Virus record (IMG/VR): IMGVR_UViG_3300024308_000016
Span: 62,001 to 126,000 of that record
Length of the DNA stretch: 64,000 nucleotides
Strand: one strand, 5' to 3'
Shown here: piece by piece, positions 8,259 through 60,155 of the stretch
Numbering within the stretch: position 1 is the stretch's first letter
How the letters are laid out: every line of letters starts with the position of its first letter
Translations under genes and position numbers: made by a program
The notes under the pieces: generated by a model
Databases searched by the model: none
Told to the model about the DNA's origin: nothing
What the model saw: only the letters and a program-made list of their open reading frames with translations

Positions 8259-8731
8259 TGCAGTTCAACCTTTTGGCACGAGTCACCAACCAAGGTGGTG
8301 ATTCCCGTCAGGCTCACTCCTCCATCGTCTTGCATGGCCCGAAGTCCGTCAACGAGATCGTGCAAAACATCTACGTGACAGCTCAACTCATCGACAAGGA
8401 GCGACGTGACCCGTCAAGCCGTTCCATTGAGCTGTTTGCCTCCTATGGCGTCAACGGCAACGTGGCCAATGATCGCCGCACTGTGGGCTCGCAAGCTGAC
8501 ACCAACACGTTCATGAACGTGGTCGGCTCCATGGTTCGCACAGTGTGGGATCACTGGAATGCCGGTAACAGCGTGAAGTTCAACAACTTTCAAGCGGTGG
8601 AGCTCAATGACTCCGGCGCCTTCCATGCGGACATCCAGCTCATCATGGATGTCCAAAAGGGCTACTACACCCTGGACGAGGCCAACCTGCGCGCTCGTCA
8701 TCACGTCTTCATCGAAACCATCTCGAAATAA
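8258..8731 (+). CDS. hypothetical protein
   Basis: TAATG coupling with upstream gene; typical codon bias. Confidence 0.75.
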   Translation: MQFNLLARVTNQGGDSRQAHSSIVLHGPKSVNEIVQNIYVTAQLIDKERRDPSSRSIELFASYGVNGNVANDRRTVGSQADTNTFMNVVGSMVRTVWDHWNAGNSVKFNNFQAVELNDSGAFHADIQLIMDVQKGYYTLDEANLRARHHVFIETISK

Positions 8732-8741
8732 GGAACTCATC

Positions 8742-9338
8742 ATGGACTGCATCATCATGCACTGGAGCGTCAAGGAAGGTGTGACTCCTGACCCCATCGT
8801 CGGTATCCGATCGATCGGCTGCCCGTCCCTGTCCAGTCTGCGCAAGGAAGCGCTCCCTTACCTGCACCGTCTGGCCGATGCCACTGATGCCACCTTGTGC
8901 ATGGGTATCAAGACCATCTTCTCCGGGCAGATGGGCACTTGCGTGCGCGAGGCGTTCATGGTGCCGGAGCTGCTGCCTATTCAAAACTTGGCGACAGTCT
9001 CGCATCAGCTGAACTTGACATGGGAAGAAGCCTGGGGCCTGAACAAGATTCCAGCAAACCACCGTGTCAAGCTCGAAGAATCCCTGTATCTGGTCGCCCG
9101 TGACACATTTTGGCGCCAGTTGCGGGAGACTCCCAACAGCATCGCGATGGGGACTCAGTCGTTCTCCCGCCTTCCCAATGAAAGCGACAAGGAGTTCTGG
9201 GCCCGCATCATCGGCATCTGCACCGCTCACCGGCAATGTCTCATGGCGCCCAACGCCCTGAACGAGCTGCAAGCGGGTATCCTGACTCCGGAGGAAGCCA
9301 CCTTCCAGTATCCGGGGTTTTACTTTGAGAAAGTCTGA
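8742..9338 (+). CDS. hypothetical protein
   Basis: ATG 8742 after AAGGA; operon continuity. Confidence 0.65.
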   Translation: MDCIIMHWSVKEGVTPDPIVGIRSIGCPSLSSLRKEALPYLHRLADATDATLCMGIKTIFSGQMGTCVREAFMVPELLPIQNLATVSHQLNLTWEEAWGLNKIPANHRVKLEESLYLVARDTFWRQLRETPNSIAMGTQSFSRLPNESDKEFWARIIGICTAHRQCLMAPNALNELQAGILTPEEATFQYPGFYFEKV

Positions 9339-43843: not shown

Positions 43844-44359
43844 ATGCCTGCTTTGTATTCCGCCCAAGCCAAGTTCCTCTCGGACAAGGCCATCGACCTG
43901 ATCACCCACCGCAAGACCGGCGCTTTGATTGCTGGCTGTCGGTTCATCCTGAGCCGTCACCATGAGCATGAAAGTGCGGTCGACGGATCGCCTGAAACCG
44001 TCAAGCGAGCGATGGACAAGCTGGGGTTCGTGAAGATGTCTGAATCCGCGGATCCATTCGTCGACAGCATCTACGACCGCTGGCTGTATACGCGCCCCAT
44101 CACTGATGGAGACAACTACATAGGGATCCGGCTGGTATCGATCCTGGGCCCCCGTGTGGATGGCCGACTGACAGTGGCTCGGCCCAACCTGATCACAGTG
44201 GTGGACTACACTATCACCGACGGCACGAACATGGAAACTGAAGTCATGGCCGCTCAGCTCGCCCGTGTCGAACACGGTATCGTGGAACGCCAGTATGGCT
44301 TTACTGCGGCAGAAACCCGTGAAACGTTCCAACGCGCCATTGCCAACGCTCGCCTGTAA
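43844..44359 (+). CDS. hypothetical protein
   Basis: TGAAAG upstream; typical codon bias. Confidence 0.7.
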   Translation: MPALYSAQAKFLSDKAIDLITHRKTGALIAGCRFILSRHHEHESAVDGSPETVKRAMDKLGFVKMSESADPFVDSIYDRWLYTRPITDGDNYIGIRLVSILGPRVDGRLTVARPNLITVVDYTITDGTNMETEVMAAQLARVEHGIVERQYGFTAAETRETFQRAIANARL

Positions 44360-44422
44360 CAGGTAACCCACTACCCCAGCTCCAGCCTTTGTGCTGGGGT
44401 TGGGGGCTATGAAAGCATCCAT

Positions 44423-44785
44423 ATGTTCGAAGCAGATATAGAGTTACCCCAGGGCTTCACAGAGCAGCAAGCGGCTGCTCGCCAGATCGCTCTCCAGTAT
44501 CTGGGGGTCGTCAGCAAGGTCACCGCCAACACTGACGGAGAGATCATTGCTCCCGAGCTATTGTGTCGCCTAGAGTCCGAGCTTGCCAAGGAAGTAGCCA
44601 TGCTATCCCTGCGGTACGGTGCCCAATCCTGGATGAATGACTTCGGTCATCGGTTCCGGTTCTCCGTCACATCCAACATGGATGCCATCGTGATCGATGA
44701 GACCAGCGGTCGTCTGTTCAGTATGTACCGCGGCCACGAGAGTGTCCTCAAGCATCACCAGTTCACCCCTATAACCGAGTCCTAA
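44423..44785 (+). CDS. hypothetical protein
   Basis: TGAAAG upstream. Confidence 0.65.
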   Translation: MFEADIELPQGFTEQQAAARQIALQYLGVVSKVTANTDGEIIAPELLCRLESELAKEVAMLSLRYGAQSWMNDFGHRFRFSVTSNMDAIVIDETSGRLFSMYRGHESVLKHHQFTPITES

Positions 44786-44799
44786 GTAGAAAGCCTGTC

Positions 44800-45399
44800 A
44801 TGAATCTGGAAACCATAGCCGTATCCCGCCAGTACGTGGAAACCCAAGCACTGGAGATGATCAACAAAGCCGTCACCTCCAATAACAACAAGGATCTGAA
44901 CCTGGAGGAGTCGATCCGTCTGTTTTGGCCTTCGGTCACGCGGATGCCGTCAGCATTCATTGTTTTGAAGGACGGCGCCTTCCAGTATTGCAGCGATCAT
45001 CCTACCACCACTCGGCGCCTGATGAGCGAGGAGGGGTTCTCCGAGTACAGTGCAGGTCACGATTACTGGAACCGGGAAAACCGTCAACGCTATTTGAAGC
45101 TACTGTACTCTACGTATCCGTCGGGGACGCAGTATTTAGCGGGTGTGGGCATCGTGACGATCGATCATGACTCCAATTTCGGAATCAGTGATCACGATAT
45201 CCGCTCGATCACTGTCCAATCGCGTGTTTACACCTTCAGCGAGAAGGCCGAGATGATGGTGCCCTACAAGGCGCTGCAAACTCTGGGCACTCCGGACCCA
45301 GAAGCCTATATCCGGGAGAGGCTCAAAGAAAAGGATGAAGTCATGATCGAATCGGTGATCAATAACTATCGCCATATGCGGTGCGAGTTCGCGACATAA
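44800..45399 (+). CDS. hypothetical protein
   Basis: TAGAAAG upstream; followed by hairpin 45403-45438. Confidence 0.7.
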   Translation: MNLETIAVSRQYVETQALEMINKAVTSNNNKDLNLEESIRLFWPSVTRMPSAFIVLKDGAFQYCSDHPTTTRRLMSEEGFSEYSAGHDYWNRENRQRYLKLLYSTYPSGTQYLAGVGIVTIDHDSNFGISDHDIRSITVQSRVYTFSEKAEMMVPYKALQTLGTPDPEAYIRERLKEKDEVMIESVINNYRHMRCEFAT

Positions 45400-45443
45400 A
45401 GCTCCGCTGTCTCAGCCCCTTGTAGGGGCTGAGATGGAGGGTC

Positions 45444-45481
45444 TTTGTAGATTACTGAGGTCACTTACACTTTACTTGAGG
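45444..45481 (+). promoter_or_regulatory. phage promoter copy P5
   Basis: TTTGTAG-N8-GGTCACTTACACTTTACTTGAGG. Confidence 0.8.
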
Positions 45482-45531
45482 ATGGCGTTTACGACCGATC
45501 CATATTTTATCGTTCAAATAGAAAGCTCTAT

Positions 45532-46074
45532 ATGTCAGGCATGTACGGGAAGATGAATATATCGAGTTGGCCGAGAATGGGGATATATGCGATCATTCCG
45601 ATGGGTGATGGTCGGATGTGGTGCAAGAAGGACTATAGCGTCAGCTGTCACGACTACTCTGAGAGATACGTAGCAACGAACCACTCTGCTGGATTGCTAG
45701 CTTCAAAAGCTGTACACACAGCGGCAATATGTAAGAAGATGGTCCACTCACAGGAGATACTTCGAGACATGGTCCAGGGTTCGACTGAGGTGCTGGATAT
45801 TCCCAGAAACCGAGCAGCCTTTGATGCCGTCGGTAACCTGCAGATGTTCATCGGGCTTTATTGTGAGTTGCCCGATGGCGATGAGCCGATCTACTCGACG
45901 TTCACTACTATGAGTCGAGGAGAAGTGTACAACCCCCTGTATGGTTGCCGAAACTCCGATGTGACACTGGCGCAGTTCCATCATCAGCTCGACCTCATCA
46001 TCAAGCTTGGCTTGTTTCGGTATGTCGACCATTTGCTCAACATATACATGAACGCACGCAAACGACTGGGGTAA
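45532..46074 (+). CDS. NPxYGK-family paralog 1
   Basis: YNPLYGCRNSDVT; AATAGAAAG at 45517. Confidence 0.75.
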   Translation: MSGMYGKMNISSWPRMGIYAIIPMGDGRMWCKKDYSVSCHDYSERYVATNHSAGLLASKAVHTAAICKKMVHSQEILRDMVQGSTEVLDIPRNRAAFDAVGNLQMFIGLYCELPDGDEPIYSTFTTMSRGEVYNPLYGCRNSDVTLAQFHHQLDLIIKLGLFRYVDHLLNIYMNARKRLG

Positions 46075-46077
46075 CGG

Positions 46078-46701
46078 ATGTCAAAAGTATACGGAGAAGT
46101 GGATCTGGCTGACGGGATCATGACAATAGGAGAGGAGACGGATGCGGGAGCTCAGATCTATCTGACCCACAAGCCAACGTATCGCTTTGAACAAGTCAAC
46201 GAGTATGACAGCCAGCATCACGACAATTCTAAGAGAGACGTCGAGAAAAGCGTCTGGACCGACAACAACGATGTTGAGGATAGTGTCTCTGTGACGCTGT
46301 CTGCATCAGTGGACCGCATGGTCAAAGCTTTGAAGAGTGGCACGCACATGCTGCTGTTTCAGGCCAGTGGCTGGGAGTTGATGAATCTGGTCAAGGAACC
46401 CGACTGGGCGTGGCCGGACGATGTGTTCTCAGTTATCCCTAGGCGTGATATGGGAGAATTCATTAACGCTCGCCGTCAGCTGTACCTGAGCCTGGAGGCT
46501 AGCGAGGTATACAGACTCGCTGAGATGATCACGTTTCGGGGTATGGACATCGACGACTATAGTCCAATCTTCGGCAAGAAGTACTATGCTGTCGATCTCG
46601 ATGAGTACGTAGGGTTATTGCGCCAAGCCCAGAGCCGGGGCATATGGTGGCTGCAAGACTACGTTAGACACAAACTAAGACAGGGACGCAAAAATGAGTA
46701 A
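46078..46701 (+). CDS. NPxYGK-family paralog 2
   Basis: Starts MSKVYGE; YSPIFGKKYYAVDLDEY. Confidence 0.75.
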   Translation: MSKVYGEVDLADGIMTIGEETDAGAQIYLTHKPTYRFEQVNEYDSQHHDNSKRDVEKSVWTDNNDVEDSVSVTLSASVDRMVKALKSGTHMLLFQASGWELMNLVKEPDWAWPDDVFSVIPRRDMGEFINARRQLYLSLEASEVYRLAEMITFRGMDIDDYSPIFGKKYYAVDLDEYVGLLRQAQSRGIWWLQDYVRHKLRQGRKNE

Positions 46702-47275
46702 GCGATACGGAGAGATCAACTACAACAATGGTGATTATGGATTCTACACGAACCGACCTGTATGCGACTTCAAGGAGATCAATGCCCGAGAAGATATGTA
46801 CGGTGATAGCGGCCGCAGTAGACGCAATATAAAAGGAATAGCTACGTTCAGGGGATCTGTCGTCACACTGACTGCATCAATCGACATGATGGTCAAGGCA
46901 CTTAAGACTCCTGCGTATATGGGAATGATCGGCATGAGCTCCTGGGAGCTTGTGGCTGCTTCCTCCGTGGACAGGGGTTGGTTCAGCGATGACGACCCGA
47001 TGGCATGCATCCCCTCTGAGGACATCCGCCGCTACAATGACGCGATCGACTGGTTTACCTCGTGTCTGCGGGGGGTGTGTTGGCCAGTTATCATACCGCT
47101 GCTGACGTTCGAGGATCTCGACCGCAATGAGCACAATCCCCTGTTTGGCAAACGGATCTTCGAGATCACGCACGTCGAGTACATCGCTCTGTTGCGTCAG
47201 ATCCAAGCCAAAGGTCCTTACTGGCTCAATGACCATGTCAGGGCCACTCTAAGAAAGGCAAGAAAAAGTGAGTAA
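46694..47275 (+). CDS. NPxYGK-family paralog 3
   Basis: Starts MSKRYGE; HNPLFGKRIFEITHVEY. Confidence 0.75.
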   Translation: MSKRYGEINYNNGDYGFYTNRPVCDFKEINAREDMYGDSGRSRRNIKGIATFRGSVVTLTASIDMMVKALKTPAYMGMIGMSSWELVAASSVDRGWFSDDDPMACIPSEDIRRYNDAIDWFTSCLRGVCWPVIIPLLTFEDLDRNEHNPLFGKRIFEITHVEYIALLRQIQAKGPYWLNDHVRATLRKARKSE

Positions 47276-47822
47276 GCGATATGGAGAAGTGGAGCACGGA
47301 GTCATACGAAGTGGGGCATGCGAGGACATAACGCATATGCGTATCAAAAGAAATATTCGTGTGCTCCAAAATCGACGTAAGGAAGGTGCTCATAAGACGC
47401 GCCTACGCTCAGAAGAAAGTCACCTGCAGTACGAGGGCACCATCTACTGTCATATCTCCCGGCTAATTAAGTTACTGGCTACTGACCTTGACTTCAAGAT
47501 CGCTATGCAGGGAAATGCACTCGAAGAAGGTGACTTTCGAGCAGCTGACTATTCGAATGAACGCATGTCTGCTATCGAAGAAACTGCTGAAGAGATATAC
47601 ACGCACATATACGCCTTTAGCTATTTTTATGCTTTTGATTTATATGCGCGCCTGGCTCTCCTGTATGCTGACACAATGGATTATAATCCGATATTCCAAA
47701 AGCGCAATTGCGAGATTACTCGATTGGAATATATCGCGTTTTTAAAGCAATTGCAAAGGGAGGGTATTCAGTCATATATTAACCGGGCAATTAAACTGAT
47801 AATGAATTCGAGAAAGGGGTAG
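47268..47822 (+). CDS. NPxYGK-family paralog 4
   Basis: GTG start, SKRYGE; YNPIFQKRNCEITRLEY. Confidence 0.75.
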   Translation: MSKRYGEVEHGVIRSGACEDITHMRIKRNIRVLQNRRKEGAHKTRLRSEESHLQYEGTIYCHISRLIKLLATDLDFKIAMQGNALEEGDFRAADYSNERMSAIEETAEEIYTHIYAFSYFYAFDLYARLALLYADTMDYNPIFQKRNCEITRLEYIAFLKQLQREGIQSYINRAIKLIMNSRKG

Positions 47823-47826
47823 GTTT

Positions 47827-48255
47827 ATGGGACTTATGTTTTCTGATCTGCCAGACCATCCGAATGACATCTCCTTAAAAACCGATCGGCGACTGTCTCG
47901 CTTATTTTGGCGTCTGTGCAATATCCTCGACACCGAGCAAGCGTTTGCACGCTATGTACGATACTGGGGCCATAAGAACAGCGGGCTTTACCGGATAGCA
48001 AGTCAGTTCTATGACCCATGCTACCTGACTGGGAACTGGATAACTAACGCCATGACTGTATCCGGCGCTGATGCCAGAGTAGTCAACTCTGTCTTGATGC
48101 GCGATAACCGAGGCGGTATTAATCCGCTATACGGTCGCAACTCCCGTCTGGTGACTCGCCAGATGCACCATACGCTGATGCTGGACCTGGCCAAGCTCAG
48201 TGACGGGGAGATCATCCGAGAGCTCACTAGGCGAGTTTTAGGGAGCACACCATGA
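47827..48255 (+). CDS. NPxYGK-family paralog 5
   Basis: INPLYGRNSRLVT. Confidence 0.7.
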   Translation: MGLMFSDLPDHPNDISLKTDRRLSRLFWRLCNILDTEQAFARYVRYWGHKNSGLYRIASQFYDPCYLTGNWITNAMTVSGADARVVNSVLMRDNRGGINPLYGRNSRLVTRQMHHTLMLDLAKLSDGEIIRELTRRVLGSTP

Positions 48256-48752
48256 GTGGACGTGGAGCAAGGATCGCATTACTGGAGTACGATGATGACG
48301 CACATGGCTTTACGCGCCGTCGTTATGACTACCTGACGCTGGAGCGCACGCTCGATCGGCTGCTGAGCAAGCCCGAGGCTGTGAAGTTCATGCTCAACAG
48401 TGCTCTTCTCAAAATCGGGGAGTATCGGGATAGGTCTCTTTCCTGGGACCAGATCACTCGCCCTGATCAATCTTTGGCCATCAAGGGCTATCGGGAAAAG
48501 CAGCGAGCGGTCTATTCTGACATGGACCGATTATGTCGCATATTCAACGATATAGTCGGTTATAATAAGGCCGGGTATTGGATTTTAGGAGTATTGAATT
48601 CCAAAGATTTTAATCCTTATTACGGAAAGGCAAATATATCAGTAAAACCAATTGAAATAATCGAAGAGTTACAGTTAATGCGCTCAATAGGTGGTAAAGC
48701 CTCTATTAACCGTATTCGAGCAAATCCCGCTATCGTTAGTTTATTCAAGTAA
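48252..48752 (+). CDS. NPxYGK-family paralog 6
   Basis: FNPYYGKANISVKPIE. Confidence 0.7.
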   Translation: MSGRGARIALLEYDDDAHGFTRRRYDYLTLERTLDRLLSKPEAVKFMLNSALLKIGEYRDRSLSWDQITRPDQSLAIKGYREKQRAVYSDMDRLCRIFNDIVGYNKAGYWILGVLNSKDFNPYYGKANISVKPIEIIEELQLMRSIGGKASINRIRANPAIVSLFK

Positions 48753-48767
48753 GAAAGCTTTATTGTC

Positions 48768-49139
48768 ATGACAGAACAAATCTCCTCTCCCCTGGACAAC
48801 TTCCACGCTGAGCTCAACAAGCTCAAGAGCAGTGTGGGTTCCTCCAAAGACCACCCCATCCGCAACCTGTCAGCCAAAACCGCTGACCCCAGCTTGTCTC
48901 AGCACTACCGCCAGATGGCTGCTGTGGTGCGTACGGGCACTGCCGCCGAGGTGCTGCCTGGCGTATGCCTGGCACTGATGGCGGTGAAGATGGACGATAT
49001 CCCCGTCAATCCCATCTACGGCAAGGTCACCGCACTGATCACTCACACGGAGGTGCTCGCCAAGATCGATGAGTTCCTGCGCTCCACCCCCAAACAGCTC
49101 AATGCCAAGTACGGCAAAGACCTCACCATCAAGGCGTAA
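48768..49139 (+). CDS. NPxYGK-family paralog 7
   Basis: VNPIYGKVTALITHTE; higher GC than paralogs 1-6. Confidence 0.7.
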   Translation: MTEQISSPLDNFHAELNKLKSSVGSSKDHPIRNLSAKTADPSLSQHYRQMAAVVRTGTAAEVLPGVCLALMAVKMDDIPVNPIYGKVTALITHTEVLAKIDEFLRSTPKQLNAKYGKDLTIKA

Positions 49140-49145
49140 TTCATC

Positions 49146-49757
49146 ATGACTCACTATTACAAACTGGCCGATCTCCAGGAGATCGCCAAGCACAATGCAG
49201 GGGGTTACTTCACTGGCGAGTGTGTCCAAGTCTGGACGGGTCTGAGTGTGATGTTGTCGGGCTATCCAGAGGTGCAGTCTCTGTCTACGGAAAACGGGCT
49301 GCTCGTGCGTCCCAAAGGTCGGACTGCTTACCGCATCATGGTGCTGAACGTTCGCTACTACGCCGATGGCGAATGGCACACCAAGGAGATCCGTTACAAC
49401 CGCTACCGTCCCATCGACGGAGGCTTTCCAGCCAGTGGGGAAGATACCGTCGTGCCGCTGCGGATACTGGACTACCTGCAAGGCCAGGGCGTGGGAAAGC
49501 CCGGTGAGTACGATGAGCTCAGGTTGTTCTTCAAGCGATTCATGGGCCGGGAGTACAGACTGGGGGACTTCCGTGCTCTGATGGAAGTATGGTGGGGCTG
49601 CAAGTACTTCGACCACCACTACTGGGCGATCGATGGCAGCAGCTACTCCTTTCACCGGGATCGTCATGTCCGCATGATGCAGATGGCCAAGACCAATCCC
49701 GTTGCCAAGGAGATGATGCTGCACCACAAAGTACCCATCACGGAGGAACGCAAGTGA
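49146..49757 (+). CDS. hypothetical protein
   Basis: 203 aa; operon continuity. Confidence 0.7.
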   Translation: MTHYYKLADLQEIAKHNAGGYFTGECVQVWTGLSVMLSGYPEVQSLSTENGLLVRPKGRTAYRIMVLNVRYYADGEWHTKEIRYNRYRPIDGGFPASGEDTVVPLRILDYLQGQGVGKPGEYDELRLFFKRFMGREYRLGDFRALMEVWWGCKYFDHHYWAIDGSSYSFHRDRHVRMMQMAKTNPVAKEMMLHHKVPITEERK

Positions 49758-50005
49758 AAGATGTGCTCCTAAAGCGTATGAGCCTGCGGGCTGCTGCTAA
49801 TGCGGTTCTCATCGCGTACGACCCCGAGTCTGATGCGCCAGATGCTCCCATCCAGGGAGTATCCCGGCAGCTCGACCGCAAGATCAAGGAAGCATTCGGG
49901 GAGACGCCTCAAGTAGAGGCTGACCCACTGCCTCCGCCTATCCGACCCAAGCGCGGAATCCCGTTGTCGGGACGAGAGCCTTGGTATCACAGCTACCGTC
50001 GATAG
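49754..50005 (+). CDS. small hypothetical protein
   Basis: GTGA coupling; GGAGG upstream. Confidence 0.6.
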   Translation: MKDVLLKRMSLRAAANAVLIAYDPESDAPDAPIQGVSRQLDRKIKEAFGETPQVEADPLPPPIRPKRGIPLSGREPWYHSYRR

Positions 50006-50034
50006 TTGTGTCATAAGCCAGACAAAGCACATCC

Positions 50035-50070
50035 CCTACACTCCCAGACCGCGAGGTCTGGGAGTGTAGG
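50035..50070 (+). terminator. long hairpin
   Basis: CCTACACTCCCAGACC-GCGA-GGTCTGGGAGTGTAGG, perfect 16 bp stem. Confidence 0.65.
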
Positions 50071-50162
50071 TTTGGATTGGATGCGTAGGTAAGCGTGTTT
50101 CCACACGCCCACCCCGCCAGTGACCACTGGCTAAAGTTGCTTGTACTTTATTTTTTGTCCCC

Positions 50163-50200
50163 TTTGTGGAAGTTTTCAGTCACATATACTCTACTTGAGG
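50163..50200 (+). promoter_or_regulatory. phage promoter copy P6
   Basis: TTTGTGG-N8-AGTCACATATACTCTACTTGAGG. Confidence 0.75.
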
Positions 50201-50242: not shown

Positions 50243-50851
50243 ATGACCAGCAAGCCCCTGAACATCGCAGCTGCCCAGATTCCTGCCCCTGATACGACTC
50301 CCACTCGTTCGCGCTTTAACTTCCCGCGGGTGGCCGAGGACGCCCGCTACGATGACCGCGACTACTGTGGCCGTGACCATGAACGTGAAGAGCGTACCCG
50401 TGAACGCGAAGACCTGGCCCGTGAACGTGACCTCGAACGCGCTGACCGCGATCGTGAACGCGCAGACCGTGCTCGTGCTCGTGACGACCGCCGCCGCGAA
50501 CGTGACTACGGCCGCTCCAGCGACGCCTATCGCTGTGCCCGCATCTCGGCACCCAGTCGCCATACGCCCGTGCTCAACGGCGTAGACTTGAGTATCGCTG
50601 AGCAGCGCTTCCTCAACGATCGCGTCCAGGCCATGAGCGAAGAGATCCTGGACCTGATGGCCTATGCCGAGAACACCCGTGAGCGCATTGCCCGTGAGCA
50701 GCGTCTGCTGGCTGATCGTCTGGTTGAGATCAAGGAGTTGACTGTGCTTCGTGACGCCGGACTGGAGCGCCTGAGCGCGATGCTGACCAAGCCGGCTCCC
50801 GCTCCTGCTCCTGCTGCTCCGCTTGAAGTCCCGACGTCCGATACACCTTGA
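50243..50851 (+). CDS. R/D/E mixed-charge low-complexity and coiled-coil protein
   Basis: RDHEREERTREREDLARERDLERADRDRER segment, then a helical region and a PAPAPA tail. Confidence 0.75.
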   Translation: MTSKPLNIAAAQIPAPDTTPTRSRFNFPRVAEDARYDDRDYCGRDHEREERTREREDLARERDLERADRDRERADRARARDDRRRERDYGRSSDAYRCARISAPSRHTPVLNGVDLSIAEQRFLNDRVQAMSEEILDLMAYAENTRERIAREQRLLADRLVEIKELTVLRDAGLERLSAMLTKPAPAPAPAAPLEVPTSDTP

Positions 50852-51730: not shown

Positions 51731-52948
51731 ATGGTCAATCCCGCTACCGCCATCCCCCGCAGCCAATGGAAGTTCCCCATCGGTCCTGATCGCGACACGA
51801 ATGCGTTCTTCTTGTTTCACTCTGTGCGGTCCGTGACTGCCGACGAGAACCGCGCCGCAGAAGTGGTGCTGCTCGACGCGCTGGTGCAGCACGCTAAAAA
51901 TGAGCTCAAGGAGGCTGAGGCCGTCGCTACTTTGCGCATCATCCAGACCTACGGCACCACGGAGCTGTGGGCGGGCGAGTCCGTCCGCAGCCTGGTGCTC
52001 CTCGTGCGGGAATACATGGACGCCAAAGTAAATGCTGCGCCTGCGAACTCCGAGTTCGACCGATACAAAACGCGGGTCATCGCCATGGCGCGCATCAAGA
52101 GCCCTCAGGACGTCCTGCATGAGATGCGCAAGTGGAGTGCTCGCCACATCGCGGTCGCCAGTGTAACGATCCAGCATCTGAAGGTGGTACGTGACGCCTT
52201 TTGCCTGACGGTGGGATTTTCCCAGTACCTGGAGGCGTTCAACGAGGAGATGGAGCGCATCTGCAAAGACGCCGGCATCGTCAACCGCGCTCCGGCCCTG
52301 TTCAAGACCGAGGACAAGGAGTTCCACGCGAGCTACAAGAATATCGATCACCTCTTGACGGTCGACTTCCTGACTAAGGTGCCCCTGGTTCTGCAAAAGC
52401 TCAGCCATTCTACCGATCCCCAGTTCTCGGACATCATGGTGCTGGTCGATTCGTTCAAGCGCACGATAGGCTACCAGGAGCTGCAAGGCAGTCTGCTGCC
52501 CCTGATCATCGGGCACGTCGATTACCTCAAGAGTCAGGGCGCCTGGATCGACAATGACCGTGGCGTGCCTGGCCCTCCTGTGGAAATCCCTGAACGCCTG
52601 GCCAAACAGCTGTACGCGTTCAACGAAGCGCTGGTCACCAAAAAGCCAGCCTGGGCGCTGAGTGTGTTTCGGATCATCAGCAAGTCCATCGCTGAGCAGC
52701 CGGCAGATGTTCAGGCGGCTGCGTTCACCAAGCTCAAGGCTCTGAGTGTGGACTTCCCCACGTTCACACGCCTGAACCTGGCTATGGCGCGCCGTCGCGC
52801 TACAGGTGAGCTCTTCAAGGCCATCGACACCATGAGTCGCACGCTGGGCCTGGATCCTCACCTGAGTGATGCTGAGGCCGGTATGGGGCTGGATCGGGAG
52901 ATCGAAGCGACTGTGGAGTTCATCATCGAGACCTTCAACCGCCGTTGA
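51731..52948 (+). CDS. hypothetical helical protein
   Basis: 405 aa; TAGAAAGG upstream. Confidence 0.8.
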   Translation: MVNPATAIPRSQWKFPIGPDRDTNAFFLFHSVRSVTADENRAAEVVLLDALVQHAKNELKEAEAVATLRIIQTYGTTELWAGESVRSLVLLVREYMDAKVNAAPANSEFDRYKTRVIAMARIKSPQDVLHEMRKWSARHIAVASVTIQHLKVVRDAFCLTVGFSQYLEAFNEEMERICKDAGIVNRAPALFKTEDKEFHASYKNIDHLLTVDFLTKVPLVLQKLSHSTDPQFSDIMVLVDSFKRTIGYQELQGSLLPLIIGHVDYLKSQGAWIDNDRGVPGPPVEIPERLAKQLYAFNEALVTKKPAWALSVFRIISKSIAEQPADVQAAAFTKLKALSVDFPTFTRLNLAMARRRATGELFKAIDTMSRTLGLDPHLSDAEAGMGLDREIEATVEFIIETFNRR

Positions 52949-53010
52949 TCGGCTTCATGCCTGGGGCACCTGCTCCAGGCACTTCCCAACCCTCTAATAG
53001 AAAGTTCGAT

Positions 53011-54048
53011 ATGTCCAAAGACCGCAAGACCGCCATCAGTGAGATGATCGCTCGCTTCGATCTCTATAAGACCGAGGCGGGGATTATCCCTGTCCATCTG
53101 TCGCTGTTGATCATCTCCACGGCCTCGATACGTGGGCAGCTGCGCCGTTGGGTCGACAGCCAAGAGCCCTCCCAGGCTTTCCTGGCTGCCGTCGAAGCAT
53201 TCAAGGTCGAAGCCAACAATCTGAGCGACGGCTTTCGCAAAATCGTCGAGACGGCTATCTCAGCTCGGGCTAATCCCTCGGTTGATTCCCTGGAATACCT
53301 GCAGCGGGACCTGCAGGCTTTGGCCTCGGATGTCTATCACTTCAAGTGGACGATCCCTCACCTGCTGATCACGGCTTTGGGGATCAACTACACCGTGCTT
53401 GAGTCTGTGACTCAGGTCAGCAATGACATCAACTGCTGTGTGCGGGCGATCGAGACTGAAGGTGTGACAGGGTGCTCGTTCATGGAGGACGCTAGCTTCG
53501 GTGCTAAGCGTCTGAGCCAAGAGCGCGAAAAGCTGCGTATCATCATCTCTGGCATCATCGACCACCTCAATCGCTACCTGACCAACAAGTCCGAGGGCTA
53601 CAGCGGCACTCCCAGGCAGCGTACGGACGCACTGCTCGCCCGTATCCATCAGCTGCCGACGGAGCAAGGCAAGTTCGTCAAGGAGTACCTTCGATGGGCA
53701 GCTACGGGCTTTCACACGTTCCATGGAAGGATCGAAGATGTATTGCGGGCTCTGAACCCAGGCCGTGAGCACTATCGCCAGGACTTCACTGCGTTGACGG
53801 GAATAACCACCCAGCAGCTGGGGTTGCTGAAGGAGCGTTACAGCCAAAGGGAAAAGGCTGCCGATGAGCTCGAAGCCTTCAGCCAGTTGGGTGGAGTGCG
53901 GGCTCCTGGTCTGACGGGCATTGAAGCTCGCTACTGGCGCGATCAGATCAACCAGCTCAGTGCACTCATCCAGGCCCAGGTGTCTGACTCTTTGCTGTGG
54001 GCTCAAAGCCAGCCCATGTACCAGGGATTGGATCCGACCGCTCTGTAG
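53011..54048 (+). CDS. hypothetical helical protein
   Basis: AATAGAAAG at 52996. Confidence 0.75.
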   Translation: MSKDRKTAISEMIARFDLYKTEAGIIPVHLSLLIISTASIRGQLRRWVDSQEPSQAFLAAVEAFKVEANNLSDGFRKIVETAISARANPSVDSLEYLQRDLQALASDVYHFKWTIPHLLITALGINYTVLESVTQVSNDINCCVRAIETEGVTGCSFMEDASFGAKRLSQEREKLRIIISGIIDHLNRYLTNKSEGYSGTPRQRTDALLARIHQLPTEQGKFVKEYLRWAATGFHTFHGRIEDVLRALNPGREHYRQDFTALTGITTQQLGLLKERYSQREKAADELEAFSQLGGVRAPGLTGIEARYWRDQINQLSALIQAQVSDSLLWAQSQPMYQGLDPTAL

Positions 54049-56648: not shown

Positions 56649-57098
56649 ATGAAAGCTGTTATGAACCGCAACAAGATTTCGGAAGTTGAAGTGACTGTTT
56701 TGACCCAGTTGTTGACAACTGCCATGCAAGACGCCATCGATAACACGACGTCCATGGGGTATGCCCATCTTCGCTGTGTGGAGGAAGACATCGAGAAAGC
56801 GTGGGTGCGCCGCCAGGCATTTGCTATCGATGTGTTTCGCAAGATGCGGCAAGCCGAGGGTTTGAGCGCAACCATCGAGATTGCGCAAGACAACATCTCC
56901 GGCGTTCGCATCAACGTCTTGGAGACGGAAAGCGGGGAGTTCTACTATGAGGTCGTCTATCTTCTCGACGGAGCTAAGAACGTCCTCAAGCCTCCTTCGT
57001 ATTGGGAGATGAACGAGACGGTGAATATGGCGGACTTGCTGCATGACGCCCAACTCGACATCCAGCAAAGAGCAAGCAACGAGAAAGGAAAGACATGA
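56649..57098 (+). CDS. hypothetical protein
   Basis: First ORF after P7; ATGA-coupled to the next gene. Confidence 0.7.
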   Translation: MKAVMNRNKISEVEVTVLTQLLTTAMQDAIDNTTSMGYAHLRCVEEDIEKAWVRRQAFAIDVFRKMRQAEGLSATIEIAQDNISGVRINVLETESGEFYYEVVYLLDGAKNVLKPPSYWEMNETVNMADLLHDAQLDIQQRASNEKGKT

Positions 57099-58651
57099 AG
57101 ATTGAGTCGGATTCTGGCACTATCTTGAGCCAGGATAAAAGTGTGCGTATCTCGCACACCGAGGATGGCGTCAAGCGTGGGGTGACTTTTCCGATCACCC
57201 TGTACAAGCAAGACTACTTCAAAAGCGACGAGACGTTCTCCAGCATCAACAGCTATTGGGCCCAGCTGCCCCAGGCTGACCAAGATGAGATCTTCCGGAT
57301 CTACGAGAACATCCGTGAGCTGTTTGACTCGGTCAATGGGATCAAGGAGCTCAATGACGAACTGAAGGTGTATGTGGCCAACCTCATGGCTTTCCACAGC
57401 GCCCCAGATGTCGAGCGATGGATCCGCACTACCTCTGGGCTGGAAGTGCCCAAGAGCGTGCAGCAAGAGTACAGCTTTGACGTGGACAAGAACACGACGC
57501 GGGACCAGACCTACATCTACTCCGACTACCTGGGGTTGATGAGCCTGTCGGTGATCCTGCGTGCGATGATCCCGATCTGGGCCGTCTACAACAAGACCAT
57601 ACGCAGTGACAGCGGCAAGTCCTCCAAGGACACGCACTCGTTCCAATTGCTGGAGAAGTCCAGCATCTACAAGTGCGAGCCTATGGAGCGGCTGCGCCGG
57701 TATATCCAGGCCAACCTCAATAAGAGCTCCCACACCGGCAACCACACGCTGGAGTTGCTGTGCTCGGACGACATGCCCGAGATCAACCTGGCGCTGGTAT
57801 GCGTGAGAAAGCTGTGCCTGGGAGAGCTCAGGGTCGATGATCCCAAGCAAAACCTGGCGGCGCTGGTGTACAACTACATCGTGGACAGACCTCCTCCACA
57901 GGGCCAGGACTTCTCCAAGCGCGTGCTGGAGAAGAAGATCCCCACTGAAGGTGGCGGGGAATCCGGGGAAAACAATGGATCGACCCTGGAACTGTACAAG
58001 GCCCGTTCGACCGTCACCGTCGGTCGGATCGCCGAAATGGAGTACGCGTGGAAGGATCCCCACAACCTGGCCAGGTATCTGTGCCCTGAATACGTACCCA
58101 GTCATCTGGATCGAGCACTGGAGACGACCCAAGAGCTGTACACGCATACCGTGCATCCGTGCATGTTGACGCTGGCTCAGTGGGTACTGGCTCCGGTATT
58201 CCCACCGATGGGTCTGTTCTATATGGACACCAACCTGATCCTGCGGGCATTCGCAGTGACCGAGACCGTGTTGCGCGGACGAGGTTTCAAGTCTTTGGCT
58301 CTGCTGTCGTCGGCGTATTCGCTCGATGACGAGGACGAAGGCATGCGAGTGACACCTGTGGGCTCCAAGAGCCATATCGGAGCAGAGATTCAGGAGCGGA
58401 TGCTGGGACCCTTCCCCTACGCCCGTGAACAAAGAAAGCGCACGGCTACTCCTGTGCGCACCTGCTTTGTCACGGAAGACATCAAGGACTTGTCGTCGAA
58501 GTTCTTGGAGCACACCTGGCGCGCTACTGCAGACATCGAGTTGGTCACTGAGGTGCTGCGCACCTCCAGCGTTCGACGGATCCCCATCCCTCCGAACTTG
58601 AGAAGTGAACTGGCTCTGATGCTGCTGGACGCTGAAGAGCGGTTCGAGTAA
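57095..58651 (+). CDS. non-virion RNA polymerase specificity subunit (phiKZ gp68-like)
   Basis: 518 aa; INSYWAQLP..QDEIF.IY, TY..SDY.GL..LS..LRAMIPIW and QW.L..VFPP patterns; synteny. Confidence 0.7.
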   Translation: MKIESDSGTILSQDKSVRISHTEDGVKRGVTFPITLYKQDYFKSDETFSSINSYWAQLPQADQDEIFRIYENIRELFDSVNGIKELNDELKVYVANLMAFHSAPDVERWIRTTSGLEVPKSVQQEYSFDVDKNTTRDQTYIYSDYLGLMSLSVILRAMIPIWAVYNKTIRSDSGKSSKDTHSFQLLEKSSIYKCEPMERLRRYIQANLNKSSHTGNHTLELLCSDDMPEINLALVCVRKLCLGELRVDDPKQNLAALVYNYIVDRPPPQGQDFSKRVLEKKIPTEGGGESGENNGSTLELYKARSTVTVGRIAEMEYAWKDPHNLARYLCPEYVPSHLDRALETTQELYTHTVHPCMLTLAQWVLAPVFPPMGLFYMDTNLILRAFAVTETVLRGRGFKSLALLSSAYSLDDEDEGMRVTPVGSKSHIGAEIQERMLGPFPYAREQRKRTATPVRTCFVTEDIKDLSSKFLEHTWRATADIELVTEVLRTSSVRRIPIPPNLRSELALMLLDAEERFE

Positions 58652-58700
58652 TCGAACACTACTACCCTTTCCTCCAACCTCTATAAGAAAGCAATTGAAC

Positions 58701-60155
58701 ATGTCCCAATCTCGCGAAAAGATCGAAGTGCGTCGCCTGATGTTCCAGGAAACCGGCATCTTCCGTGATGTCTATTCCCGGCCGCTGGAACTGATGATGA
58801 GCGACAATGCCGACGAGAAGATCCGCAATCGCCTGATGAATGCGCACCGTGACGGCAAGCTCAATGCGTCTGCTTTCAAGGGCGTGGCCTCCCGTATCCT
58901 GACACCTTCTATGAACGTGTCCGAGCGTGACCGCATCATCGTTCCCAATGGCTGGGACCGCCCACGGTGCCGCTTCTCGATGGAGCTTGGTATCACCAAT
59001 CGCATCGGTGGCGAGGAGACCATGTTTGTCCAGGGCTTCACGGACCACCTGGGCTTGTCGGGCGCCAACAGCGTCGACCCGGACATGCGGCTGTATATCA
59101 ACGGCTTCATCCGGGTGGGCTATGGCGTTCGCCACACATCGTTCGGCCGTGAGCAAGTACCGCTGATCAAAGAAATGGCCCAGGTCATCTCCGGGCGCCT
59201 GGTCTACGACCGCGACTACGACACCCATGCCATCCGGCCGGTCGATATGTTCTCGCGCATCCAGACCAACTTCTACGACCTGGGCTCTTCGGAGCCGCTG
59301 CGTGATACGCGGTCCATGGTGTCGTCGCCAGCCACTGCTTTGTTCTCGCGGCGCAAGCACGTGCTGCCAGCGGAGTATCTGGCCAACACCTTGCAGTCGT
59401 TCAGGTCTGCGTCCGACACCGCGGACTTCGCTCAAGGCGCTACCGACATCATCGGCCATGCCCAGCAAGACCTGAGCGCGGACATCGAGATGATGCGCGA
59501 CAACCCGTTCGTGCGTCGAATCAGCGCCATCCAAGGCGTGATCGAGTCTGTGGAGTTCACCATCAAGGACTTGTTGGAAGTTGATCCAGACGCAGGTCGC
59601 CCTGGCCGCATCCGTGGCTCGGTGCTGGAAACCTCGGCTCGTCGAGAGCTGGCCACGATCGAGAACTGCTCTCGCTGGGACGATCGTACTGCCCAGGCGC
59701 AGTGGGCCGTGCAGATGAGCAACGGCATAGCCGCGATCATGATGAAGTACTACCACCGGGAGCTGCAGTTCACAGCGACCAACATGACCACCGGTGGCGT
59801 GGTGGTCAGTATTATCGAGACCACACCGGTGGCCGACGGTATGCCACTGTCGTTCATCGACTCCATGGTCGACGAGATCGAGGACTTGCTCCTGGACCTG
59901 AGCAACAACAACGAGATCCTCTTCGACACCATCGTCGAGGCAAACCTCTATGATCAGACCCGTATCGAGGTCGGCCTGGAAAGCGACCCCATGGAGCTGT
60001 TCTATGTGCCGAGTTTCGCAGACTCGCTCATGAATTCCATGTACACGCGAGATCGCGATGCTGTCGACGATATCGTTTCCGATTTCCAGTCCATCATCAA
60101 CGACATGACGGGTGAGCTGTCGGGCAGCGCTCACGATCTGGGCAACGCTCTGTAA
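58701..60155 (+). CDS. picA: phage-nucleus protein import factor (phiKZ gp69 / PicA / Imp1-like)
   Basis: ETG....VYSRP, IVPNGW..PRCRF.M, GFTD..G.S, RP.D.F and P.FADSL motifs; directly after the gp68-like gene. Confidence 0.65.
   Translation: MSQSREKIEVRRLMFQETGIFRDVYSRPLELMMSDNADEKIRNRLMNAHRDGKLNASAFKGVASRILTPSMNVSERDRIIVPNGWDRPRCRFSMELGITNRIGGEETMFVQGFTDHLGLSGANSVDPDMRLYINGFIRVGYGVRHTSFGREQVPLIKEMAQVISGRLVYDRDYDTHAIRPVDMFSRIQTNFYDLGSSEPLRDTRSMVSSPATALFSRRKHVLPAEYLANTLQSFRSASDTADFAQGATDIIGHAQQDLSADIEMMRDNPFVRRISAIQGVIESVEFTIKDLLEVDPDAGRPGRIRGSVLETSARRELATIENCSRWDDRTAQAQWAVQMSNGIAAIMMKYYHRELQFTATNMTTGGVVVSIIETTPVADGMPLSFIDSMVDEIEDLLLDLSNNNEILFDTIVEANLYDQTRIEVGLESDPMELFYVPSFADSLMNSMYTRDRDAVDDIVSDFQSIINDMTGELSGSAHDLGNAL

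What the first reader, a model, noticed from the sequence alone, without database searches (positions are those of the whole stretch)
45444..49139. Seven-gene tandem array with a conserved NP(L/I)(Y/F)GK C-terminal domain and variable N-termini
Seven consecutive coupled genes under promoter P5 end in the same ~55-aa module: YNPLYGCR, YSPIFGKK, HNPLFGKR, YNPIFQKR, INPLYGRN, FNPYYGKA, VNPIYGKV, each followed by (V/I)T/D..(E/Q) and two amphipathic helices. Genes 1-4 also begin MS(G/K)xYG(K/E). Genes 3 and 4 share DNA-level starts (ATGAGTAAGCGATACGGAGA / GTGAGTAAGCGATATGGAGA). The middles are highly diverged and genes 1-6 are AT-richer than the flanks. I do not recognise the domain. Inference: a diversifying effector family in which a constant module docks on a common partner and variable parts engage different host or defence targets.
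Basis: partly seen in the sequence, partly recalled or inferred. Interest (0 to 1): 0.75.

Follow-up and report, generated by a model that had tools for sequence, protein, structure and literature searches.

The report
Fast-evolving gene family in a jumbo phage
Seven neighbouring small genes of an uncultured giant bacteriophage are real, very diverged copies of one previously undescribed gene, probably switched on early in infection and reshuffled quickly between related phages, as expected for proteins that act on the host; their actual job is still unknown.

Summary
Seven consecutive + strand ORFs (45532-49139) share a C-terminal module of about 45 aa, consensus Y-N-P-x-[FY]-x-K-x4-[VI]-T-x2-E-x9-G.

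- **Significance:** the short motif occurs in 10 of 3451 ORFs of the genome. Seven of those are these genes, always 43-47 residues from the C-terminus.
- **Scope of homology:** g1-g4 are homologous over their full length, not only at the C-terminus.
- **Known families:** none match in Pfam, PHROGs, NCBIfam, PADLOC, PDB, AlphaFold DB, BFVD or the ESM Atlas.
- **Distribution:** an exhaustive search of 1.84 billion proteins found the family only in three or four related metagenomic phages, at the same position, with 7, 8 or 9 copies.
- **Evolution:** g1-g6 are 22-34% identical between phages whose flanking genes are 50-89% identical. Closer relatives show a mosaic of replaced and recently exchanged alleles. 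g7 is conserved (66%, dN/dS 0.05).
- **Expression:** the operon sits behind one of 24 copies of a phage-specific promoter that also precedes homologs of phiKZ gp68 (non-virion RNA polymerase subunit) and gp69, so early expression is inferred.

Best reading: an orphan early accessory family evolving by gene birth and death. The family is new, but tandem paralog arrays in jumbo phages are a known kind.

The parts
45411..45433 (+). G+C-rich hairpin closing the upstream transcription unit, just before the promoter. A hairpin at the same place precedes the arrays of the relatives.
   Evidence: Sequence read. The equivalent hairpin is seen in L002 and L008. It was not reported by the terminator scan (no T run).
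45444..45483 (+). Inferred to be of the early (virion RNA polymerase) class.
   Evidence: 24 copies in the genome, all on the + strand and upstream of gene starts. One copy (window 56609) precedes the homologs of phiKZ gp68 and gp69. The element is conserved upstream of the arrays in L002 and L008. The early class is inferred by analogy with PMC7598289.
45484..45531 (+). 5' leader with a conserved start (GGCGTT(T)ACGACCGATCC) and the recurrent AAATAGAAAG translation-initiation region.
   Evidence: The leader is nearly identical in L002 and L008 although g1 is only 26% identical at protein level. AAATAGAAAG occurs 20 times in the genome and its 9-mer AATAGAAAG 33 times.
45532..46074 (+). g1, 180 aa, family group A (orthologs of 186 and 188 aa in relatives).
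46078..46701 (+). g2, 207 aa, group B. Full-length paralog of g3 (33% identity).
   Evidence: (blastp 2e-33).
46694..47275 (+). g3, 193 aa, group B. AlphaFold2 model with pLDDT 72.7 and pTM 0.70.
47268..47822 (+). g4, 184 aa, GTG start, group C (orthologs of 192 aa). Lowest GC of the array (0.438).
47827..48255 (+). g5, 142 aa, group D (orthologs of 157 aa). The weakest member by sequence.
   Evidence: leave-one-out E 0.6; E 1e-4; D-C 92%, D-B 87%.
48252..48752 (+). g6, 166 aa. Sister to the relatives' two groups of 150-155 aa and 160-164 aa.
   Evidence: (A-g6 89%, F-g6 71%).
48768..49139 (+). g7, 123 aa, group G. The short, slowly evolving member (66-68% identity to orthologs; dN/dS 0.05 between L002 and L008).
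   Evidence: (D-G 60%).
46648..46713 (+). First copy of the 66-nt junction repeat. It covers the end of one gene (...RK-x-E-stop) and the overlapping start of the next (MSKRYGE).
   Evidence: family D1, 74% identity, spacing 574 nt.
47222..47287 (+). Second copy of the 66-nt junction repeat (g3/g4 junction).
49146..49757 (+). Co-operonic conserved gene, 203 aa, not a family member. His/Cys/Asp-rich conserved motifs, 53-54% identical to relatives, always directly after g7.
   Evidence: (control, no link to the family).
50035..50070 (+). Strong terminator-like hairpin (16 pairs, 10 G-C) that closes the operon. The next promoter copy is at 50178.

Best explanation
The seven genes are diverged tandem duplicates of one ancestral gene.

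Shown here:
- They encode small (123-207 aa), soluble, mostly helical proteins of an orphan family. The family is restricted to one small clade of uncultured phiKZ-like jumbo phages.
- Members share, as I read the alignment, an N-proximal helix; a middle part that varies in sequence and length; and a basic C-terminal module.
- The module is a turn/hairpin at Y-N-P-x-[FY]-x-K, a Thr-capped 14-residue helix, a Gly, and a second helix.
- The family changes by gene birth and death, by wholesale allele replacement and by recombination inside the array.
- g1-g6 evolve far faster than the neighbouring genes but stay intact (dN/dS 0.06-0.46 where measurable). g7 is conserved like a core gene.
- The repeated 8-nt stop/start overlaps lie within a 66-nt junction repeat.

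Inferred:
- The seven genes are expressed together with a conserved 203-aa protein as one tightly packed operon, running from a phage-specific promoter to a strong terminator.
- That promoter most likely belongs to the early class read by the virion RNA polymerase.
- The junction repeat offers a substrate for unequal crossing-over.
- The proteins are early accessory factors made in the host cytoplasm that act on changeable targets: host takeover, anti-defence or competition with other phages.
- The conserved module provides the common fold and possibly a common contact (its +3 to +6 charge would suit a nucleic acid or an acidic surface). The variable part would set the specificity.
For: **Family is real:** leave-one-out and independent profiles, profile-profile links with negative flank controls, and motif count and position.

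**Orphan:**
- No Pfam, PHROG, NCBIfam or PADLOC hit.
- Only 14 hits at E<=1e-3 among 1.84e9 proteins: the seven window genes, six proteins of the relatives, and one weak hit (E 1e-4) to a tandem-repeat contig.
- Nothing in five cultured jumbo phages at per-genome E<=1, with a positive control on the own genome.

**Synteny and copy number:** arrays of 9 (L002) and 8 (L008) genes at the same place.

**Rates:**
- Window against L002: flanks 50-89% identity, g1-g6 22-34%, g7 66%.
- L002 against L008: flanks dS 0.6-0.8 and dN/dS 0.02-0.08. Group A is 38% identical. Groups B1 and B2 have dS 0.10-0.13 with dN/dS 0.44 and 0.21. Group F has dN/dS 0.46 and group G 0.05.
- Tree: lineage-specific duplications, and L003 is a recombinant.
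- GC3 is depressed in g1-g6 and in their orthologs.

**Operon and promoter class:**

**Structure and charge:**

**No hypermutation machinery or signature:** no reverse transcriptase in the genome. Between near-identical strains the array differs by 0-0.7% while the flanks differ by 2.7-4.7%.
Against: - No functional evidence of any kind. There is no homolog of known function, no expression data, and the host is unknown.
- Early expression rests on an analogy (motif class and the genes it precedes), not on RNA data.
- dN/dS never exceeds 1, so the fast change could be relaxed constraint plus recombination rather than an arms race.
- The g7 model is poor (pLDDT 53.5). The shared fold of the module therefore rests on one decent model (g3) and on matching secondary-structure strings derived from overlapping alignments.
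- g5 and g7 are linked to the family only by moderate statistics plus position.
- The complex prediction gave no answer.
Confidence: 0.5

Rival explanations
1. The family is real, but the conserved C-terminus is only the folding core of a single-domain helical protein. There is no common partner and no division into a constant and a variable module. The copies are redundant or dose-adding versions of one activity, or subunits that assemble with each other.
For: - g1-g4 types align over their full length.
- In my reading of the alignment, all groups share an N-proximal helix as well.
- The g3 model has pTM 0.70, which suits one compact domain.
- The tight packing and overlaps of the genes would suit subunits made in fixed ratios.
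Against: - Redundant copies would be expected to homogenise or be lost. Instead seven to nine very different lineages are kept at fixed positions in phages that differ by 50% or more in these genes.
- The charge of the non-module part ranges from -14 to +9, while the module stays at +3 to +6.
Confidence: 0.22
2. The basic C-terminal module is a nucleic-acid-binding, dimerising element, similar to a ribbon-helix-helix or another strand-helix-helix unit. On this reading the family is a set of early regulators of transcription, RNA stability or translation.
For: - The module carries +3 to +6 charge in nearly all members, and groups A-C end in a basic N-[AS]-R-K tail.
- The layout is a short strand ending in a hydrophobic residue, a capping Thr, a 14-residue helix, a Gly and a second helix.
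- The Thr-to-Gly spacing of 15 equals that of Arc, Mnt and CopG as I recall them. That recollection is a lead from memory, not a test.
Against: - The Pfam RHH_1 and Arc models find nothing in the genome even at per-genome E<=10.
- A profile of the module finds no ribbon-helix-helix chain in the PDB at E<=10.
- AlphaFold2 pairs the strand within the same chain, as a hairpin.
- The putative core-facing strand positions are not consistently hydrophobic.
Confidence: 0.15
3. The genes encode virion-packaged, injected proteins, as in the T4 internal-protein locus. The shared MS-x-x-YG-[EK] N-terminus would be a packaging or cleavage tag.
For: - A conserved, predicted-disordered N-terminal peptide occurs in groups A-C, including g1, whose start overlaps no upstream gene.
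- The T4 internal-protein locus is also hypervariable (own knowledge).
Against: - The operon carries the promoter class that also precedes the gp68 and gp69 homologs.
- The one virion-protein homolog checked in the window (17645-19639) lies on the opposite strand, which carries no copy of this motif. The 5500-7248 gene on that strand also has a weak secondary PHROG hit to a virion structural family.
- Groups D-G lack the N-terminal peptide.
- Y-G-E does not fit the S/A/G-x-E cleavage motif of phiKZ-type prohead proteases as I recall it.
Confidence: 0.05
4. The ORFs are decaying duplicates or chance ORFs without function.
For: Low GC3, very fast divergence, and no homologs outside the clade.
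Against: - All seven frames are intact and tightly packed.
- Orthologs are kept at the same positions in at least three further lineages.
- dN/dS is below 1 in every measurable pair.
- Near-identical strains carry the whole array collinear, with no gain or loss of genes.
Confidence: 0.03

Closest known systems
[quoted passage not shown]
   Same: A head-to-tail array of paralogs in a jumbo phage genome. Copy number differs between relatives, and DNA-level junction repeats remain.
   Different: - The copies here are not highly similar. Most pairs share only the module of about 45 aa, and even orthologs are 22-34% identical.
- The array is small (7-9 genes) and positionally stable.
Hyperplastic internal-protein (IP) locus of T4-like phages: diverse small genes with a shared N-terminal capsid-targeting sequence (own knowledge, not checked in a paper here)
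   Same: A cluster of small, quickly replaced genes that share short conserved terminal segments while the rest differs. The general idea is a common address plus variable cargo.
   Different: - No sequence similarity.
- The main conserved part is C-terminal and is a folded module, not a leader peptide.
- The promoter class points to early expression, not late.
- There is no evidence of packaging.
PHROG 889 / Pseudomonas phage PaP2 gp51-like proteins (function unknown), with four paralogs elsewhere in this genome
   Same: - Their C-termini read [FY]-x-K-x4-[IV]-T-x2-D-h-I-x2-L.
- They align to the array module in the same register: hhalign P 3.7e-4, probability 36%.
- Six of seven array subgroups align at that register, with P from 1e-3 to 0.1.
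   Different: - The phrog_889 model does not hit any array gene.
- The array proteins lack the family's C-G-[NT]-T-A-C-x-A-G motif and its N-terminal helix.
- PaP2 gp51 stops after one helix.
- The shared segment is short and partly a generic helix cap (T-x-x-E/D).
Ribbon-helix-helix DNA-binding domains (Arc, Mnt, CopG)
   Same: Strand, capping residue, 14-residue helix, Gly and second helix, with basic character. The spacing comparison comes from memory.
   Different: - No profile match.
- The strand is predicted to pair within the chain.
- The module is C-terminal to a larger helical body.

Membership tests
The array family itself (seven window genes as one family) | Shared C-terminal module recognisable by a profile that did not include the tested gene | tested here: met
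   - Leave-one-out E-values: g1 2e-5, g2 4e-5, g3 5e-12, g4 1e-9, g7 5e-4, g6 0.04, g5 0.6.
- A relatives-only profile, which includes orthologs of each gene, ranks all seven on top, E 2e-19 to 1e-4.
- Group-to-group hhalign links are 60-98%, against at most 2.7% for flank controls.
- g5 and g7 are the weakest.
The array family itself | Same fold of the module in different members | tested here: inconclusive
   The g3 model (pLDDT 72.7) and the g7 model (pLDDT 53.5) give the same secondary-structure string over the module. However, the g7 model is of low confidence and the two alignments overlap.
PHROG 889 (PaP2 gp51-like, unknown function) | Match to the family profile | tested here: not met
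   The phrog_889 model hits no array gene at E<=1. In the whole genome it hits only 8303-8509, at E<=10.
PHROG 889 (PaP2 gp51-like, unknown function) | Central C-G-[NT]-T-A-C-x-A-G motif and N-terminal M-(A)-N-[IL]-E helix | tested here: not met
   Both are absent from all array proteins in the alignments.
PHROG 889 (PaP2 gp51-like, unknown function) | C-terminal aromatic-x-K-x4-[IV]T-x2-[DE]-helix segment | tested here: inconclusive
   hhalign P 3.7e-4, probability 36%, in a consistent register. The segment is short and of low information.
Ribbon-helix-helix (Pfam RHH_1, Arc) | Match to the family profiles | tested here: not met
   No match in the genome at per-genome E<=10, with positive controls in 10-14 reference genomes. 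No RHH chain among PDB profile hits at E<=10.
Ribbon-helix-helix (Pfam RHH_1, Arc) | Dimer with an intermolecular two-stranded ribbon that binds DNA | not testable with these tools
ADP-ribosyltransferases (lead from the ESM Atlas feature search) | Beta-rich ART fold with an H-Y-E or R-S-E catalytic triad | tested here: not met
   - Atlas scores of 0.56-0.63 are at noise level.
- The models are almost all helical.
- The only nearly invariant residue is the Asn of Y-N-P; there is no invariant His, Arg or Glu.
T4-type internal proteins with capsid-targeting sequence | Conserved N-terminal leader in all members, late expression, presence in virions | tested here: inconclusive
   The leader-like peptide occurs only in groups A-C. 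The promoter class points to early expression. Virion content cannot be tested here.
Diversity-generating retroelement targets | Reverse transcriptase plus template repeat, and adenine-directed hypermutation of a variable region | tested here: not met
   No RVT_1 match in the genome. Near-identical strains differ less in the array than in its flanks.

The most novel reading that the evidence does not exclude
The conserved C-terminal module (with the N-terminal MS-x-x-YG-[EK] peptide in groups A-C) could be a portable address domain. It would dock a changing set of cargo domains onto one fixed hub early in infection. Candidate hubs are the early-infection vesicle or nascent phage nucleus, the ribosome, or the conserved co-operonic 203-aa protein. 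That would be a modular effector system in a nucleus-forming phage. In these phages import is currently thought to depend on surface patches of the folded cargo rather than on terminal signals (PMC12908238).
Probability: 0.12. Interest if true: 0.8.

Novelty: new member of a known kind. Interest (0 to 1): 0.42.

Why it matters
**Why it could matter**
- Jumbo phages of the phiKZ type carry hundreds of genes of unknown function, and more than half are dispensable under laboratory conditions (PMC13282480).
- Loci that change much faster than their surroundings, while staying intact and probably early-expressed, are the most likely places to find proteins that meet host defences or rival phages.
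- This locus is a clean, well-delimited example. It has a defined operon, a defined family profile, positional orthologs in several lineages, and one slow-evolving member (g7) that could reveal the ancestral activity.
- If the shared module proves to be a docking or nucleic-acid-binding unit, it would give a handle for finding the targets of a whole set of proteins at once.

**Limits**
- The phage is known only from metagenomes.
- The host is not identified.
- Nothing here shows what the proteins do.

Tried and rejected
**Homology searches that found nothing**
- Pfam, PHROGs, NCBIfam and PADLOC scans of all seven proteins: no usable hit.
- Megablast and tblastn against 50,697 phage records: nothing for the array or for three flanking genes.
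- Word-indexed search of 5.8 billion proteins with g3, and with the outside candidate at genome 8276-8914: only self.
- IMG/VR and JGI metagenome scans with g3, with the family alignment, with a flanking gene and with the downstream protein: only the window's own contig.
- Family profile against five cultured jumbo phages: nothing at per-genome E<=1.

**Fold searches**
- Profile searches of PDB sequences: noise only.

**Other attempts**
- ESM Atlas feature search: whole-protein hits at chance level. The C-terminal part pointed to ADP-ribosyltransferase families at 0.56-0.63. I rejected this because the models are helical and no catalytic residues are conserved.
- A second AlphaFold2 job on g7 with 29 sequences gave a poor model (pLDDT 53.5), so no fold search was run on it.
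- Complex prediction of g3 + g7 + the 203-aa neighbour: 'no answer'. It is evidence neither for nor against binding.
- Ribbon-helix-helix idea: not supported by profiles.
- Diversity-generating retroelement: no reverse transcriptase and no strain-level hypermutation.
- The weak hit P0013 is a 925-bp contig made of 2.9 copies of a 315-nt unit. Its score is inflated by repetition, so it was set aside.
- phiKZ gp54 (chimallin) as a single query found no match in the genome. Given how fast chimallin diverges, this is inconclusive.
- Sigma-70 promoter and terminator scans were at shuffle level, apart from the hairpin at 50035-50070.

Full report
**1. The observation**

The seven ORFs are as described: g1 45532-46074, g2 46078-46701, g3 46694-47275, g4 47268-47822 (GTG start), g5 47827-48255, g6 48252-48752 and g7 48768-49139, all on the + strand.

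- So are the MS-x-x-YG-[KE] starts of g1-g4 and the nearly identical first 20 bases of g3 and g4.
- Those bases are part of a 66-nt direct repeat spanning the g2/g3 and g3/g4 junctions (46648-46713 and 47222-47287, 74% identity, spacing 574 nt).
- At both junctions the stop of one gene and the start of the next share eight bases (ATGAGTAA or GTGAGTAA). This ties the C-terminal ...RK-x-E to the next gene's MSK.
- g1-g6 are poorer in G+C than the genome (0.44-0.52 against 0.559). The effect is strongest at third codon positions: 0.45-0.63, against 0.69-0.77 in g7 and the flanks.

**2. Is it more than chance?**

- The pattern [NS]P[LIYF][YF]x[KRC] occurs in 10 of the 3451 six-frame ORFs of at least 40 aa in the 272-kb genome. 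Seven are the array genes, each with the motif 43-47 residues from the C-terminus.
- HMMs of the C-termini built without the tested gene recover g3 (5e-12), g4 (1e-9), g1 (2e-5), g2 (4e-5) and g7 (5e-4). g6 is marginal (0.04) and g5 fails (0.6).
- A profile built only from the proteins of related phages places all seven genes at ranks 1-7 (E 2e-19 to 1e-4; next ORF 0.04). This profile includes orthologs of each gene, so it shows orthology as well as the shared module.
- Profile-profile comparison of ortholog groups gives the following:
  - A-B 95%, A-C 97% and B-C 98%, each over the full length.
  - D-C 92%, D-B 87%, E-F 95%, A-g6 89%, F-g6 71% and D-G 60%, mostly over the C-terminal part at the motif register.
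  - The upstream 199-aa and downstream 203-aa genes, used as controls, never exceed 2.7%.
- As I read the 29-sequence alignment, it also shows a second shared block, an N-proximal amphipathic helix. The Asn of Y-N-P is the only nearly invariant residue.

The family is therefore real. g1-g4 types are full-length homologs rather than unrelated N-termini on a constant module. g5 and g7 are the least secure members.

**3. Genome and operon**

- The window is bases 62001-126000 of a single 272,393-bp virus record. The record comes from a subsurface metagenome.
- It is a distant relative of phiKZ-like jumbo phages:
  - a virion protein is 24-30% identical to proteins of Erwinia and Pseudomonas jumbo phages;
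  - window 57095-58651 is a homolog of phiKZ gp68, annotated in one phage record as a putative non-virion RNA polymerase subunit;
  - window 58716-60101 matches phiKZ gp69 (E 3e-30). I know gp69 as the import factor PicA/Imp1 (own knowledge). The review PMC12908238 calls PicA a core gene found only in nucleus-forming phages;
  - a tubulin-like ORF with a GGTG motif lies at genome 11378-12511 (my reading).
- phiKZ gp54 as a single query found nothing, which is inconclusive.
- A conserved element (TTTGTA, about 10 nt, then a 25-mer) occurs 24 times in the genome, always on the + strand and upstream of gene starts. The window copies start at 7870, 22995, 34617, 38739, 45459, 50178, 56609 and 62460.
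- The copy at 56609 precedes the gp68 and gp69 homologs.
- According to PMC7598289, the one motif that can be found bioinformatically in RNA-polymerase-encoding jumbo phages has each time proved to be the early promoter read by the virion polymerase. PMC12908238 lists PicA among the early genes. I therefore infer, but have not shown, that the array is an early operon.
- The inferred operon runs from 45484 through g1-g7 and the 203-aa gene (49146-49757) to a 16-bp hairpin at 50035-50070.
- The hairpin-promoter-leader arrangement is conserved in the relatives. Part of the leader is nearly identical there, although g1 itself is only 26% identical.

**4. Relatives**

- No match was found in 50,697 phage records or in IMG/VR. 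The word-indexed protein search found only self.
- The exhaustive HMMER search of 1.84 billion representative proteins found 14 hits. Seven are the window's own genes, six belong to relatives, and one is a repeat artefact.
- The relatives are metagenome contigs:
  - L002/L004 carries nine family genes of 186, 202, 196, 200, 192, 157, 150, 160 and 123 aa.
  - L008 carries eight, of 188, 202, 196, 192, 157, 155, 161 and 123 aa.
  - L003/L005, L006 and L017 are variants.
- The arrays are always at the same place, between the same upstream gene and the 203-aa gene.
- A maximum-likelihood tree groups the genes by position:
  - g1 groups with the 186/188-aa genes, g4 with the 192-aa genes and g7 with the 123-aa genes; each of these branches is well supported.
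  - g2 and g3 lie outside the relatives' 202/196/200 triplet.
  - g6 is sister to the relatives' 150-aa and 160-aa groups.
- Duplications or losses are therefore lineage-specific.
- L003 carries L008-like alleles at some positions and L002-like alleles at others, so it is a recombinant within the array.

**5. Rates**

- Window against L002: flanking genes are 50-89% identical in protein. The two upstream genes (43844-44359 and 44800-45399) are 36-37%, g1-g6 are 22-34%, g7 is 66% and the 203-aa gene is 54%.
- L002 against L008:
  - Flanks have dS 0.6-0.8 and dN/dS 0.02-0.08.
  - Group A is only 38% identical, with saturated dS. This looks like allele replacement.
  - B1 and B2 have dS of only 0.10-0.13, younger than the flanks. 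This looks like recent exchange. Their dN/dS is 0.44 and 0.21.
  - C, D, E and F are 51-72% identical, and F has dN/dS 0.46.
  - G is 93.5% identical, with dN/dS 0.05.
- Contigs of four other metagenomes laid on 44300-50100 show near-identical strains:
  - One contig spans the whole stretch collinearly, with 118 differences.
  - In another run the array pieces differ by 0-0.7%, while 44300-45501 differs by 4.7% and 49238-49802 by 2.7%.
  - One run carries a g1 segment (45730-45965) that is 18% diverged.
- The genome has no reverse transcriptase.
- The diversity thus comes from duplication, replacement and recombination, not from local hypermutation. No pair shows dN/dS above 1.

**6. Structure and chemistry**

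- AlphaFold2 on g3 with the seven paralogs gave pLDDT 72.7 and pTM 0.70:
  - the N-terminus is disordered (residues 1-22);
  - the body is helical;
  - the module has short strands at H-N and K-R around the N-P-L-F-G turn, a helix at 160-173 capped by Thr159, Gly174, and a helix at 175-191.
- g7 with 29 sequences gave a poor model (pLDDT 53.5), but the same secondary-structure string over the module.
- No library returned a fold match.
- The last 45 residues are basic in nearly all members (+3 to +6 in the window genes). The rest ranges from -14 to +9.

**7. What it most likely does**

The features are:
- an inferred early promoter class;
- small soluble proteins;
- intact frames with dN/dS below 1;
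- atypical codon composition;
- lineage-specific duplication;
- allele replacement and exchange;
- one conserved member.

This is the pattern of phage accessory genes that act on variable targets. I commit to that reading with moderate confidence (0.5).

Whether the module docks on a common partner, binds nucleic acid, or is simply the folding core cannot be decided here. The complex prediction with the co-operonic 203-aa protein returned 'no answer'. The ribbon-helix-helix idea failed its profile tests.

**8. Comparison with what is known**

- Tandem arrays of duplicated genes are a recognised feature of jumbo phages (PMC13282480). Fast-changing accessory loci are familiar from T4-like phages (own knowledge). 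The kind of thing is therefore known.
- The protein family itself matches nothing described.
- The only lead is a short C-terminal resemblance to PHROG 889 proteins of unknown function.
  - That family includes PaP2 gp51 and four paralogs elsewhere in this genome.
  - hhalign gives P 3.7e-4, probability 36%, in a consistent register.
  - The array proteins fail the family profile and lack its central Cys motif, so they are not members.

**9. Verdict**

The finding is real and well delimited. It is moderately interesting: a new orphan family of a known kind. The "constant module on variable N-termini" needs correction to one fold with a fast-evolving middle. The "effector with a common partner" reading is untested.

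Noticed in passing
window 7870, 22995, 34617, 38739, 45459, 50178, 56609, 62460 (25-mer starts); 16 more copies elsewhere in the genome: A promoter-like element of about 40 nt (TTTGTA, about 10 nt, then GGTCACTTACACTTTACTTGAGGAT and variants) occurs 24 times, all on the + strand upstream of gene starts. It is probably the early promoter of this phage.
   Followed up: partly
window 45484-45505; L002 9383-9403; L008 9953-9973: The first 20 nt or so of the array's leader (GGCGTT(T)ACGACCGATCC) are nearly identical between phages whose first array gene is only 26% identical. Together with the end of the promoter 25-mer, the segment could form a small 5' stem-loop.
   Followed up: no
L001 3316-4158, 6519-7421, 8276-8914; genome 44792-45397 (outside the window): A second paralog family: four members in the genome, found by a local jackhmmer run. 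Only the 8276-8914 member matches PHROG 889, through its N-terminal part, and it has homologs in Pseudomonas podophages (PaP2 gp51). The four share a C-terminal Y-x-K-x4-[IV]T-x2-D-helix segment that resembles the array module.
   Followed up: partly
window 43844-44359, 44423-44785, 44800-45399: The three genes just upstream of the array, in a separate transcription unit, also evolve fast: 36-37% identity to relatives, and no counterpart for the 120-aa gene. The first 14 residues of the 199-aa protein resemble the N-terminus of the PHROG 889-like paralogs (hhalign P 0.003). The hypervariable island therefore starts at about 43.8 kb.
   Followed up: partly
L001 8946-9590, 9610-10242, 10254-10889: Three consecutive ORFs of 214, 210 and 211 aa look like another tandem paralog trio.
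   Followed up: no
L001 11378-12511: An ORF with a tubulin-like GGTGLN motif, probably a PhuZ-type tubulin.
   Followed up: no
window 57095-58651 and 58695-60155: Homologs of phiKZ gp68 (annotated elsewhere as a non-virion RNA polymerase subunit) and of phiKZ gp69 (PicA/Imp1 by my own knowledge) lie side by side behind a copy of the promoter element.
   Followed up: partly
window 30499-31788: A 429-aa protein matches the PHROG for glutathionylspermidine synthase (E 4e-67). This is a possible auxiliary metabolic gene.
   Followed up: no
L004 12938-17527 against window 51731-54048: The relatives carry a 1529-aa gene downstream of the array that has no counterpart in the window. The window has two genes of 405 and 367 aa there, without any database match.
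   Followed up: no
window 50243-50851: A 202-aa protein with a long Arg/Asp/Glu-rich low-complexity stretch (RDRE repeats), first gene behind the next promoter copy. It is only 35% identical to its relative over 74 residues.
   Followed up: no
window 45730-45965 (run X4): One metagenome carries a g1 segment 18% diverged from the window, while neighbouring pieces of the same run differ by 2% or less. This suggests a second g1 allele circulating among close strains.
   Followed up: no
L009 1-922: A 925-bp JGI contig made of 2.9 copies of a 315-nt unit. Its repeated ORF contains V-P-I-F-N-R-K-x4-V-T-x2-E-I-L, which looks like the module. It may be an assembly artefact, or a small repeated or circular element.
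   Followed up: partly
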